From Octopus sinensis (Eukaryota), in contig NC_042998.1 of NCBI RefSeq assembly GCF_006345805.1, positions 83,762,001-83,826,000 on the forward strand: DNA of 64,000 bases. The letters are read 5' to 3'. This document shows, in pieces, positions 46,942 through 48,145 of this stretch (position 1 is the stretch's first letter; every line of letters begins with the position of its first letter). Made by a program: the position numbers and the translations under genes. The notes under the pieces are model-generated. The model worked only from the letters and a program-made list of their open reading frames with translations. It was not told the origin of the DNA and made no database searches.

Positions 46942-48144
46942 GATCTTGGCATAGTTGGAAAATTGGGAGAATGGCTTCATGACTTTCTGAAGGATAGAAG
47001 TCAGGTGGTAGTAGCCAATGGGGCCACTTCCATTAACACGCAAATAGTGAGCGGTGTTCCGCAAGGCACTGTTTTGGGACCACTACTGTTCATAATGTCC
47101 CTCTCAGACATGCCCTCAGCCACGCAGAGAGCCACGATCACAAGTTATGCAGATGATACAAAAGTTTCACAAGCAATACAGAACCCTGAAGACACTAAGC
47201 ACCTGCAATGTGAGCTGGACAAAATATACAAGTGGGCTGAAAAGAATAGCATGCAGTTCAATGCTGAAAAGTTTCAAGCTTTATGCTATCAGCATGCAAA
47301 ACTAAATACAATACCCAATAAATACACTGGACCTGGAGGGATTGCAATCCCAGAGGCACAATCAGTACGAGACCTGGGTATTTACATGAGTGATGATGCA
47401 ACCTTTCATGTGCATGTTGCTAAATTGGCAATGAAATGTAGGCGGCTGACCGGATGGATTCTTAGAACCTTTAGAACAAGAGACCAGGAAACCATGATGG
47501 TCCTCTGGAGGACACTTGTCCTAAACCACTTTGACTATTGCTCTCAGTTATGGTCACCATCCAGTGTCAAAGTTAATCACAGAACTTGAGGCGATCCAAC
47601 GAAGCTGCACGAAGAAGATAGCCTCTGTGCAGCATATAAGCTACTGGGAAAGACTCAAGAGATTGAGACTCTATTCCTTAGAGCGTAGGCGAGAAATATA
47701 TGCCATAATATACATCTGGAAGGTCCTAGAAGGACTTTTCCCAAACTTTGGCATCGAGAGTTACACAAATGCCAGAACTGGGCGCCACTGCATAGTGCCA
47801 AGGACTCCAAATTTGCCATCAAGATGTAGGACAAGCTACTGTGATAGCCTGGGCTTCCGAGGCCAACAGCTCTTCAATATCCTCCCGAAGAACCTAAGAG
47901 ACCTGCATGGGGTGGATGCAGATGTCTTTAAAATGAAACTGGATTTCTTCTTGTCAGGTGTCCCAGATGAACCAACTTCACGGCAGGAGCTGCAGATGAG
48001 AGCAGCTGCATCGAACTCTCTCATGCACCAAATGGCAATTGCTAAGAAGCATTCGTGAAGTAAAATCATGTAGCAACACCAAATGGAGGTGCCCCAGCAT
48101 GGCCACAGCTTGTGAGCTGAAACTAGATAAAAATAAATAAATAA

Positions 48145-48145
<1 letters not shown>
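46942..48145 (+). mobile_element. 5'-truncated CR1-group LINE: RT C-terminal half, 3' UTR and (AAAT)n tail
   Basis: SGVPQGTVLGPLLF, YADDTK, YCSQLWSP, SYWERLKRLRLYSLERRR motifs. One +1 frameshift at ~47570 links ORFs 46963-47589 and 47531-48058. Confidence 0.95.

What the first reader, a model, noticed from the sequence alone, without database searches (positions are those of the whole stretch)
48084..48145. LINE-SINE partnership: shared 3' tail with a covarying stem-loop
Seen: 25 nt after the RT stop the LINE reads GGAGGTGCCCCAGCATGGCCACAGCTTGTGAGCTGAAACTAGATAAAA. SINE-B ends read GGCGGTGC(C/T)CCAGCATGGCCGCAGTC(T/A)AATGACTGAAACAAGTAAAA (e.g. 21025-21070, and reversed at 50790-50845 and 60365-60420). 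Both form a 5-bp stem with a 4-nt loop: CAGCT-tgtg-AGCTG (48106-48119) versus CAGTC-taat-GACTG (21046-21059), i.e. two compensatory base-pair swaps. Established: stringent-type LINE RTs recognise a 3' stem-loop that partner SINEs copy. Inference: this CR1 lineage mobilises SINE-B, and structure rather than loop sequence is the recognition element.
Basis: partly seen in the sequence, partly recalled or inferred. Interest (0 to 1): 0.75.

Follow-up and report, generated by a model that had tools for sequence, protein, structure and literature searches.

The report
Octopus LINE and SINE share tail
A broken copy of an octopus jumping gene (a CR1-like LINE) ends in the same roughly 55-base, two-hairpin RNA tail as the abundant short repeat (SINE) around it. 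This is the textbook sign that the SINE borrows the LINE's copying enzyme, so it is a real but ordinary new example of a well-known partnership.

Summary
The LINE fragment at 46936-48058 (+) stops at 48056-58. From 48085 it carries GGAGGTGCCCCAGCATGGCC-A-CAGCTtgtgAGCTG-AAAC plus A-rich repeats.

The tail belongs to the LINE and is not a stray SINE piece. Seven further LINE copies, including Argonauta hians and Octopus vulgaris, carry it just after the ORF.

Twelve SINE ends in the window share it, at 77-85% identity over the 39-nt core. A profile built only from SINE tails finds every readable LINE tail, and the reverse search also works.

The tail has two hairpins, not one:
It has a GGN/NCC clamp, a conserved G·U pair and an NCCA loop.
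Its loops vary from 3 to 8 nt.

Both hairpins covary. An HP1-like hairpin also occurs in 16 of 72 distant LINE relatives (about 40% amino-acid identity), against about 1 expected by chance. Tail type follows the reverse-transcriptase (RT) tree.

"SINE-B" is the 3' half of a composite SINE of about 400 nt. The LINE copy sits inside one such SINE's internal microsatellite.

Mobilisation itself is inferred, and CR1 clade placement was not tested phylogenetically. Shared, covarying LINE/SINE tails are already described, including CR1-type pairs in bivalves, so this is a new member of a known kind with modest interest.

The parts
46936..48058 (+). 5'-truncated LINE ORF2 fragment: C-terminal part of the RT plus the C-terminal domain. 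It has one frameshift near 47560-47590 and the stop codon at 48056-48058.
   Evidence: ORFs 46963-47589 and 47531-48058. tblastn with P0001 and P0002 covers 46936-48046 at 58-74% identity, with nothing further upstream. Homologues carry PF00078 RVT_1.
48059..48084 (+). Short non-conserved 3' UTR linker between the stop codon and the tail.
   Evidence: The linker length varies from about 0 to 90 nt among LINE copies, and there is no similarity to the SINE here.
48085..48104 (+). Hairpin 1 (HP1): GGA-G-GUGC[CCCA]GCAU-G-GCC. It has a lower GGN/NCC clamp, a 1x1 mismatch, a 4-bp upper stem that starts with a conserved G·U, and an NCCA tetraloop.
   Evidence: Predicted by RNAalifold and by MFE folding of 7 of 9 copies. 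In this particular copy the third clamp pair is an A·G mismatch.
48106..48119 (+).
   Evidence: The stem is CAGCC/GGCUG in other LINE copies and CAGUC/GACUG in the SINE. Loops range from 3 to 8 nt.
48120..48145 (+). Conserved AAAC (the G of GAAAC is HP2's last base, 48119), then A-rich terminal short repeats. Here the unit is (AAAT)n; sister copies and SINE ends carry the 8-mer AAAAGAAT x2.
   Evidence: Read. L084 and L086 end in AAAAGAATAAAAGAAT, and L002 in (AAAACATT)n.
46741..46935 (-). 3' half ('SINE-B', with tail at 46733-46788) of the composite SINE copy that the LINE interrupts.
   Evidence: Joining this flank to 48146-48400 rebuilds one complete SINE.
48146..48396 (-). The host SINE's internal (TA)n/(CA)n microsatellite and its 5' half (head plus 'A' body).
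50780..51176 (-). Full composite SINE: tRNA-like head, A body, (TG)n, B body and the LINE-type tail. The tail is at 50784-50839.
   Evidence: 76.2 bits.
62387..62736 (-). Composite SINE copy with its tail at 62387-62442.
60360..60677 (-). 5'-truncated composite SINE with its tail at 60360-60415.
20866..21079 (+). 5'-truncated SINE (B half) with its tail at 21021-21079.
5237..5462 (+). 5'-truncated SINE (B half). HP2 has decayed in this copy.
23740..23928 (+). Diverged SINE B half with its tail at 23873-23928.
57011..57198 (+). Diverged SINE B half with its tail at 57142-57197.
61291..61338 (-). Tail-only SINE remnant.
62171..62385 (-). Divergent B-type unit lying in tandem behind the 62387 copy. 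Its HP2 has a completely different stem, CCACU/AGUGG.
   Evidence: (19.2 bits, E 0.015).

Best explanation
The segment 48085-48145 is the genuine 3' terminal module of a CR1-like LINE family of octopods (APE-type non-LTR; APE = apurinic-endonuclease-like). The module consists of two adjacent RNA hairpins, a conserved GAAAC, and a few copies of a short (typically 8-nt) A-rich repeat instead of poly(A).

It carries a copy of this module at its own 3' end.

The most likely mechanism is the 'stringent' LINE/SINE partnership:
1. The LINE's ORF2 protein binds the hairpin module on its own mRNA.
2. It primes reverse transcription at a nicked target site from the terminal repeats.
3. SINE transcripts that present the same module are copied in trans.

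What is shown: the tail is integral to the LINE; the SINE shares it; both hairpins are maintained by compensatory changes on the sense RNA strand; tail type co-evolves with the RT.

What is inferred: the RT binds these hairpins, and this LINE family, rather than a relative, drove the SINE's amplification.
For: 1. The tail is integral to the LINE. Seven further copies carry it immediately 3' of the ORF. Their amino-acid identity to the window ORF is 59-75%. They come from three NCBI assemblies (including Argonauta hians and O. vulgaris) and four ENA metagenome contigs.

2. Reciprocal, non-circular similarity. The SINE-only HMM finds 7 of 7 readable LINE tails (E 5.5e-10 to 2.9e-5). The LINE-only HMM finds the SINE tails (E 1e-9 to 8e-4). 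Identity between the SINE consensus and the LINE tails is 30-33 of 39 nt over the core. The terminal 8-mer AAAAGAAT is shared as well.

3. Structure.
- RNAalifold recovers both hairpins.
- MFE folds give (((.((((....)))).))).(((((....))))) in 7 of 9 copies, with z from -2 to -3.8.
- On 18 tails, 90.2% of cells pair and 7 of 12 pairs show double changes. None of 500 shuffles reached the observed value on four of the five measures (3 of 500 on pair types). Slid registers pair only 21-45%.
- Independent compensatory events: HP2 position 4 changes C-G to U-A in the SINE; HP2 position 5 changes C-G to U-A in the window LINE; HP1 clamp changes C-G to U-A in L002 and L085, with a U·G intermediate in L003.
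- The HP1 G·U pair is kept in 16 of 18 copies. This points to RNA of the sense strand.

4. Depth.
- An HP1 descriptor is present in the 3' UTR of 16 of 72 LINE relatives at 38-45% amino-acid identity. Shuffles give 1.0 ± 0.9, and coding-region controls give 1.
- Upper stems in these relatives are highly varied.
- Covariance-model hits in distant loci all lie on the + strand just 3' of the ORF.
- Tail type clusters on the RT tree: 8 parsimony steps against a null mean of 17 and minimum of 12.

5. The same logic is published for CR1-type LINEs and SINEs in bivalves (PMC4824008, PMC11481361) and for amniote CR1, which has a hairpin plus an 8-mer microsatellite (PMC8665684).
Against: - No sampled LINE copy has the SINE's HP2 stem (CAGUC/GACUG), so the actual source or driver subfamily is unsampled.
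- Only 8 LINE tails and about 15 SINE tails were available. The commonest 'covariation' cell count (C-G versus U-A at HP2 position 4) is a single event inherited by many copies.
- The window LINE copy itself folds no better than shuffles (z -0.33) and is 5'-truncated and frameshifted, so it is dead.
- No pol III or tRNA head could be confirmed for the SINE with ARAGORN or Rfam.
- RT binding and trans-mobilisation are untested.
Confidence: 0.78

Rival explanations
1. The family is right but the driver is wrong. The SINE tail derives from this LINE family, but the SINE was amplified by a different, unsampled subfamily or sister lineage whose HP2 is CAGUC/GACUG. The window's lineage never mobilised it.
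For: All 8 LINE tails have CAGCY/RGCUG, and none has the SINE version. The LINE copies differ by 25-40% in protein sequence, so several subfamilies exist.
Against: HP1, the spacer, GAAAC and the 8-mer repeat are (near-)identical between the SINE consensus and L084, L086 and L001. The HP2 loop and stem sequence vary freely even among the LINEs, so an RT that tolerates this variation would probably accept the SINE stem.
Confidence: 0.15
2. The hairpins are conserved for a reason other than RT recognition. Candidates are 3'-end formation or stability of the transcript, or pairing with or priming at the target. Under this reading the SINE keeps them for that reason.
For: No binding or mobilisation data exist. 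Both LINE and SINE insertions sit at TA/TG microsatellites, which hints that the very 3' repeats matter for priming.
Against: In the experimentally studied stringent LINEs (UnaL2/ZfL2, per Kajikawa & Okada 2002 as cited in PMC4824008), the equivalent 3' stem-loop is the RT recognition signal. In addition, tail type co-varies with the RT tree.
Confidence: 0.05
3. Chance juxtaposition: the tail at 48085-48145 is a SINE fragment that happens to lie next to a LINE fragment.
For: The LINE copy is embedded in SINE-rich DNA and is in fact nested inside a SINE.
Against: Seven other LINE copies in other genomes and contigs have the tail at the same place. The host SINE is on the opposite strand, and its own tail is at 46733-46788.
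Confidence: 0.01
4. 'SINE-B' copies are just extremely 5'-truncated LINE copies and not a separate element.
For: CR1-type LINEs are heavily 5'-truncated. One remnant (61291-61338) is tail-only.
Against: Upstream of GGCGG the SINE body (…GGGGTCGATTTGTTCGACTAAA) has no similarity to the LINE 3' UTR or ORF. The SINE body is itself repeated and is joined to a tRNA-like head.
Confidence: 0.01

Closest known systems
CR1-14_CGi (oyster) with BivaV-SINE2 / BivaCORE-SINE1, and CR1 / CR1-Zenon partnerships of bivalve SINEs (Nishihara et al. 2016, PMC4824008; PMC11481361)
   Same: A molluscan CR1-type LINE and tRNA-SINEs share a 3' tail of 35-61 nt at 72-95% identity. The tail forms conserved stem-loops with compensatory changes. 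The same inference of RT borrowing is drawn.
   Different: The host class is different (octopods). The tail sequence could not be compared directly because the figures and Repbase entries are not held. Here there are two hairpins, and HP1 is traceable across LINEs at about 40% amino-acid identity.
UnaL2 / UnaSINE1 of eel and ZfL2 (L2 clade; Kajikawa & Okada 2002, Hayashi et al. 2014, as cited in PMC4824008)
   Same: A stringent-type partnership. A conserved 3' stem-loop followed by short tandem repeats is required for recognition and priming, and the SINE copies the tail.
   Different: That case is proven experimentally, belongs to the L2 clade, and has a single critical stem-loop with a specific loop base. 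This one is computational only. No match to any Rfam family, which would include any 3'-element model of that kind, was found.
Amniote CR1 3' structure (hairpin plus 8-bp microsatellite ATTCTRTG; Suh 2015 as cited in PMC8665684) and CR1-mobilised SINEs of turtles and birds
   Same: A hairpin module directly followed by a few copies of an 8-nt unit, no poly(A), and strong 5' truncation.
   Different: The repeat unit differs (AAAAGAAT or AAAACATT), the hairpin sequences differ, and the hosts are invertebrates.
Octopus SINE families OR1 / OR2 / OK (Ohshima & Okada 1994; cited in PMC4758252, PMC4824008)
   Same: tRNA-derived, CORE-type SINEs of Octopus. The 5' half of the composite element seen here carries a CCTTGGG-type core and is probably one of them.
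   Different: I could not obtain their consensus sequences. I found no statement in the searchable literature naming their LINE partner or describing this tail.

Membership tests
Stringent LINE/SINE partnership (shared 3' tail) | The SINE 3' end is homologous to the 3' end of a LINE of the same genome. | tested here: met
   Reciprocal HMM searches. Identity is 77-85% over the 39-nt core. Alignment A2.
Stringent LINE/SINE partnership (shared 3' tail) | The tail is an integral part of the LINE, present on independent copies at the ORF end. | tested here: met
   8 of 8 LINE copies carry it: window, L001-L003, L084-L087.
Stringent LINE/SINE partnership (shared 3' tail) | The tail folds into a conserved stem-loop maintained by compensatory changes. 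| tested here: met
   There are at least three independent double changes, and the conserved G·U pair indicates sense-strand RNA.
Stringent LINE/SINE partnership (shared 3' tail) | The element ends in short tandem repeats rather than poly(A). | tested here: met
   (AAAAGAAT)2 in L084, L086 and SINE copies; (AAAACATT)n in L002 and L003; (AAAT)n in the window.
Stringent LINE/SINE partnership (shared 3' tail) | The SINE has a pol III (tRNA-type) promoter head. | tested here: inconclusive
   ARAGORN and Rfam find nothing. By eye the composite head contains a B-box-like GGTTCCGGGTTCAGTC. Published octopus SINEs are tRNA-derived (PMC4758252).
Stringent LINE/SINE partnership (shared 3' tail) | The LINE RT binds the tail and mobilises the SINE in trans. 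| not testable with these tools
   This needs a retrotransposition or binding assay.
CR1 clade of non-LTR retrotransposons | A single ORF2 with an APE-type endonuclease and an RT. | tested here: inconclusive
   The RT is confirmed: PF00078 on homologues and weak matches to R2 RT structures. The upstream ORF of the Argonauta copy shows ETH, GGVALY, YRPP, DFN and SDH motifs by eye, but it has no PDB sequence match.
CR1 clade of non-LTR retrotransposons | A 3' hairpin followed by a microsatellite of about 8 nt. | tested here: met
   The criterion is as stated in PMC8665684.
CR1 clade of non-LTR retrotransposons | Phylogenetic placement of the RT inside CR1, as opposed to CR1-Zenon, L2, Rex1 or Jockey. 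| not tested
   No named reference RT sequences were available. Database names are uninformative ('jockey', 'hypothetical'). The YCSQLWSP…LYSLERRR C-terminal motif resembles chicken CR1 only from my memory, so it is a lead and not a test.
Rfam LINE 3' elements (any curated RNA family) | A match to a curated covariance model. | tested here: not met
   There is no hit at gathering score in the window. At E<=10 on the tail and E<=1 on five LINE loci, only unrelated sub-threshold or microsatellite-type matches appear.

The most novel reading that the evidence does not exclude
The two-hairpin module may be the ancient, general RT-recognition signal of a large invertebrate CR1-like clade. HP1, with its GGN-N…N-NCC clamp and frequently a YCCA loop, would be the key part. 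The octopus-specific SINE explosion would then have been driven by this one LINE family. Integration aimed at TA/TG microsatellites would also explain how the composite A-(TG)n-B SINE was assembled.
Probability: 0.3. Interest if true: 0.5.

Novelty: new member of a known kind. Interest (0 to 1): 0.3.

Why it matters
SINEs are the largest repeat class in Octopus genomes, at about 40% of transposable-element (TE) content (PMC8967140). In that repeat survey they are labelled only by head and core type (tRNA-Core, tRNA-Deu), with no LINE partner named.

Naming the LINE family whose tail they carry has three uses:
- It gives a concrete candidate for the engine of that expansion.
- It gives a better rule for annotating these repeats: 3'-anchored, two hairpins plus an 8-mer.
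- It gives a small, well-defined RNA module (about 40 nt, with natural compensatory variants) for testing how CR1-type reverse transcriptases choose their templates.

Conceptually it adds nothing new. Shared, covarying LINE/SINE tails have been textbook knowledge since the 1990s and are already documented in molluscs.

Tried and rejected
- DNA-pattern scan of viral contigs for the tail: 0 hits.
It returned only distant relatives (38-45% amino-acid identity) and no further octopod copies.
- Rfam at gathering and at E-value thresholds gave nothing relevant, only microsatellite-like miRNA or lncRNA noise.
- ARAGORN found no tRNA-like head.
- PDB sequence search with the putative endonuclease ORF gave no hit. 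The RT gave only weak R2 matches, which do not help with clade assignment.
- Supplementary files with SINE or LINE consensus sequences (SINEBase, MetaSINE paper) are not held, so a direct comparison with OR1/OR2/OK or CR1-14_CGi was impossible. The octopus genome paper is not held either.
- A full-text search for the tail motif found only unrelated primers.
- The reverse-complement control for the HP1 descriptor is uninformative, because a GG…CC hairpin is nearly self-complementary; it gave 6 hits. Shuffles and coding-region controls were used instead.
- Rejected ideas: a chance SINE fragment; SINE-B as truncated LINE copies; SINE-B as an independent short SINE. On the last point, the 5' ends of copies fall at positions 1, 22, 127, 163, 182, 192, 219 and about 340 of the composite. 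That is the pattern of random 5' truncation.
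Full report
**1. What is in the window**

The stretch 46936-48058 (+) encodes the C-terminal roughly 370 residues of a non-LTR retrotransposon ORF2. These comprise the RT palm/thumb and the C-terminal domain.
- There is one frameshift near 47560-47590 and a TGA stop at 48056-58.
- tblastn with longer homologues finds nothing upstream of 46936, so the copy is 5'-truncated.
- After a 26-nt linker the sequence reads GGAGGTGCCCCAGCATGGCC A CAGCTTGTGAGCTG AAAC TAGATAAAAATAAATAAATAAAT. 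It then runs into (AT)n(CA)n.
The SINE string it quoted is a fair consensus of copies that individually deviate.

**2. Is the tail part of the LINE?**

Two protein searches with the window ORF found seven close relatives, at 59-75% amino-acid identity, whose DNA I could fetch:
- L001, L003, L084 and L085, which are ENA metagenome contigs.
- L002, from Argonauta hians (GCA_054771915.1).
- L086, from GCA_024449705.1.
- L087, from Octopus vulgaris (OX597824.1).

Every one carries the same module immediately after the ORF. Examples:
- L001: GGCGGTGCCCCAGCATGGCCACAGCCTGCGGGCTGAAACAGAGTAAAAGAGTATATAT
- L084: GGCGGTGCTCCAGCATGGCCTCAGCCACTGGCTGAAACGGTTAAAAGAATAAAAGAATAT
- L002: GGTGGTGCACCAGCATGACCACAGCCGACTCGGCTGAAACATTTTAAAACATTAAAACATT

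The O. vulgaris copy is decayed but still scores 36 bits with the covariance model. The 'chance SINE fragment' reading is therefore excluded.

**3. Is the tail shared with the SINE beyond chance?**

- The 11-mer core occurs 8 times in the window, against 0.33 expected.
- A covariance model finds 12 SINE tails in the window plus three in the O. vulgaris locus.
- To avoid circularity I built profiles from SINE tails only and from LINE tails only. The SINE profile finds all seven readable LINE tails (E 5.5e-10 to 2.9e-5; window copy 6.7e-6). The LINE profile finds the SINE tails (E 1e-9 to 8e-4).
- The SINE consensus is 77-85% identical to individual LINE tails over the 39-nt GG…GAAAC core. This lies within the 72-95% over 35-61 bp reported for accepted mollusc partnerships (PMC11481361).
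- Similarity starts abruptly at GGNGG. Upstream, the SINE body and the LINE 3' UTR are unrelated.
- The terminal 8-mer AAAAGAAT (x2) is also common to L084, L086 and SINE copies.

**4. Structure**

The tail has two hairpins, not one.
- HP1 (48085-48104) is GGN-N-GUGC[NCCA]GCAU-N-NCC.

Predictions agree:
- RNAalifold on 7 LINE and 11 SINE tails predicts both hairpins.
- Single-sequence MFE folding gives (((.((((....)))).))).(((((....))))) for 7 of 9 copies, with z-scores of -2 to -3.8.
- The window LINE copy has an A·G in the clamp and is not better than shuffles (z -0.33).

Counting pairs on the 18-sequence alignment:
- 90.2% of cells pair.
- 7 of 12 pairs show changes on both sides.
- None of 500 column shuffles reaches the observed value on four of the five measures (3 of 500 do on pair types).
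- Slid registers pair only 21-45%.

Because copies are related, I count events rather than cells:
- HP2 position 4 changes C-G to U-A, once, on the SINE lineage.
- HP2 position 5 changes C-G to U-A, once, in the window LINE.
- The third pair of the HP1 clamp changes C-G to U-A in L002 and L085, with a U·G intermediate in L003.
- HP2 is extended to 6 bp in L002 and L086.
- A divergent SINE unit at 62171-62225 has a wholly different HP2, CCACU/AGUGG.

The first pair of the HP1 upper stem is G·U in 16 of 18 copies. That pair exists only in sense-strand RNA.

HP2 loops vary freely in length and sequence: UGUG, UGCG, ACU, AUAU, GUAAACUA, and WAAU in the SINE. In HP1 the NCCA loop, the clamp and the following GAAAC are conserved in sequence.

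**5. Depth of conservation**

A metagenome scan returned 80 LINE loci at 38-45% amino-acid identity, all marine and probably invertebrate. Their 3' UTRs all end in short tandem repeats preceded by GC-rich hairpins.
- With filters off, the octopod covariance model hits L069, L012 and L071 (E 3.5e-4 to 2.2e-3) and, more weakly, L049, L045 and L009. Each hit is on the + strand 25-70 nt after the ORF.
- A simple HP1 descriptor was applied: GG-x-y, a 4-5 bp stem, a 3-5 nt loop, y-x-CC. It is met in 16 of 72 3' UTRs. Dinucleotide shuffles give 1.0 ± 0.9 (maximum 5), and coding-region controls give 1.
- The upper stems differ widely (CGGU/ACCG, GCUA/UAGC, GACG/CGUU, GAAUC/GAUUU and others), while the CCCA, UCCA or ACCA loop recurs.
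- The clamp's third pair was not required by the descriptor, yet it pairs in 16 of 21 sequences as U-A, U·G or C-G.
- On a rough NJ tree of the RT/C-terminal region, the HP1-clamp tail type needs 8 parsimony steps. Label permutations give a mean of 17 and a minimum of 12. Other clades have their own tail types. RT and tail co-evolve, as expected for stringent recognition.

**6. What the SINE is**

BLAST with the longest copy shows a composite element of about 400 nt. Its parts are a tRNA-like head, an 'A' body with a CCTTGGG-type core, an internal (TA/TG)n microsatellite, a 'B' body, and the LINE-type tail.
- Copies start at positions 1, 22, 127, 163, 182, 192, 219 and about 340 of the composite. 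'SINE-B' is therefore the 5'-truncated form of the composite, not a separate SINE.
- Units containing only the A part and ending in the microsatellite also exist (11520-11677, 29172-29287).
- ARAGORN and Rfam do not recognise the head.

**7. Context of the LINE copy**

Joining the two flanks of the LINE (46735-46935 and 48146-48400) rebuilds one complete composite SINE on the minus strand. It aligns from position 5 to 385 of the reference copy. The LINE is thus a nested insertion into that SINE's internal microsatellite.

Microsatellites recur at other insertions:
- L001 is flanked by TA/TG repeats on both sides.
- L085, L086, L087 and L003 run into (TA)n.
- The second LINE scrap at 16127-16328 abuts (TA)n.

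This suggests integration at TA/TG microsatellites. It offers a route by which an A-(TG)n SINE and a B unit became fused. That route is an inference and was not tested.

**8. Mechanism and comparison**

The best explanation is the classical stringent partnership. ORF2p recognises the hairpin module on its own RNA and primes from the terminal repeats at a nicked target. SINE RNA carrying the same module is used in trans.

The closest documented cases are:
- CR1-14_CGi with bivalve SINEs, which have stem-loops with compensatory mutations (PMC4824008).
- CR1 and CR1-Zenon partnerships in bivalves (PMC11481361).
- The amniote CR1 hairpin plus 8-mer (PMC8665684).
- The experimentally proven UnaL2/UnaSINE1 pair, as cited in PMC4824008.

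Membership of the 'shared-tail partnership' class is met on every computable criterion. Membership of the CR1 clade is met for the 3' architecture but was not tested phylogenetically.

In the searchable literature I found no paper that names the LINE partner of the octopus SINEs or shows this tail. Repbase, SINEBase and the 1994 octopus SINE paper could not be consulted.

**9. Verdict**

- a second and more conserved hairpin;
- one compensatory swap per lineage rather than two in one lineage;
- a composite SINE rather than a stand-alone 'SINE-B';
- an unidentified driver subfamily;
- an untested clade label.

This is a solid new example of a well-known phenomenon. Interest is modest, at 0.3.

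Noticed in passing
window 46741-48396: The 1.2-kb LINE copy (+) is a nested insertion inside the internal (TA)n/(CA)n microsatellite of a composite SINE on the minus strand. Joining the flanks restores a complete SINE.
   Followed up: yes
B-only copies look like 5'-truncations. Units with only the A part and a microsatellite tail also occur at 11520-11677 (+) and 29172-29287 (-).
   Followed up: partly
window 62171-62385 (-): A divergent B-type unit sits in tandem directly behind the 62387 copy, separated by a TA/TG run. Its tail keeps HP1 (GUGC…GCAU) but has a completely different HP2 stem (CCACU/AGUGG).
   Followed up: partly
window 16127-16328 (+): A second, internal scrap of the same LINE family (residues about 291-358 of P0001) lacks the tail. 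Its 5' edge abuts a long (TA)n tract at 16050-16125.
   Followed up: partly
L001 51-134 and 1768-1816; L085, L086, L087, L003 3' ends: LINE copies in other genomes are bordered by TA/TG microsatellites, and L001 on both sides. This suggests either a (TA)n terminal repeat or a preference for inserting into such microsatellites.
   Followed up: partly
L004-L083 (marine metagenome LINE loci), 3' UTRs: Distant relatives fall into clades, each with its own 3' tail type. One group (L025, L031, L033, L035, L036, L042, L052, L066, L082) has a CCGAUGUGGGGAAAGCGCCCUGGUCGG-type structure. Another (L009, L045, L050, L053, L064, L071) has a stem-YCCA-stem hairpin without the GG/CC clamp; L049, in the same RT clade, does meet the clamp descriptor. 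All end in 5-8 nt tandem repeats such as (ACAAGTA)n or (AAAAGTA)n.
   Followed up: partly
window 20707-20728: A short interstitial telomere-like run (CCCTAA x about 2.5) lies just upstream of the SINE copy at 20866.
   Followed up: no
L002 34-1540 and 2308-5278: The Argonauta locus holds the LINE's putative endonuclease ORF (ETH, YRPP, DFN and SDH motifs) upstream of the RT, split by frameshifts. Further upstream lie ORFs of another, unrelated retroelement-like sequence.
   Followed up: no
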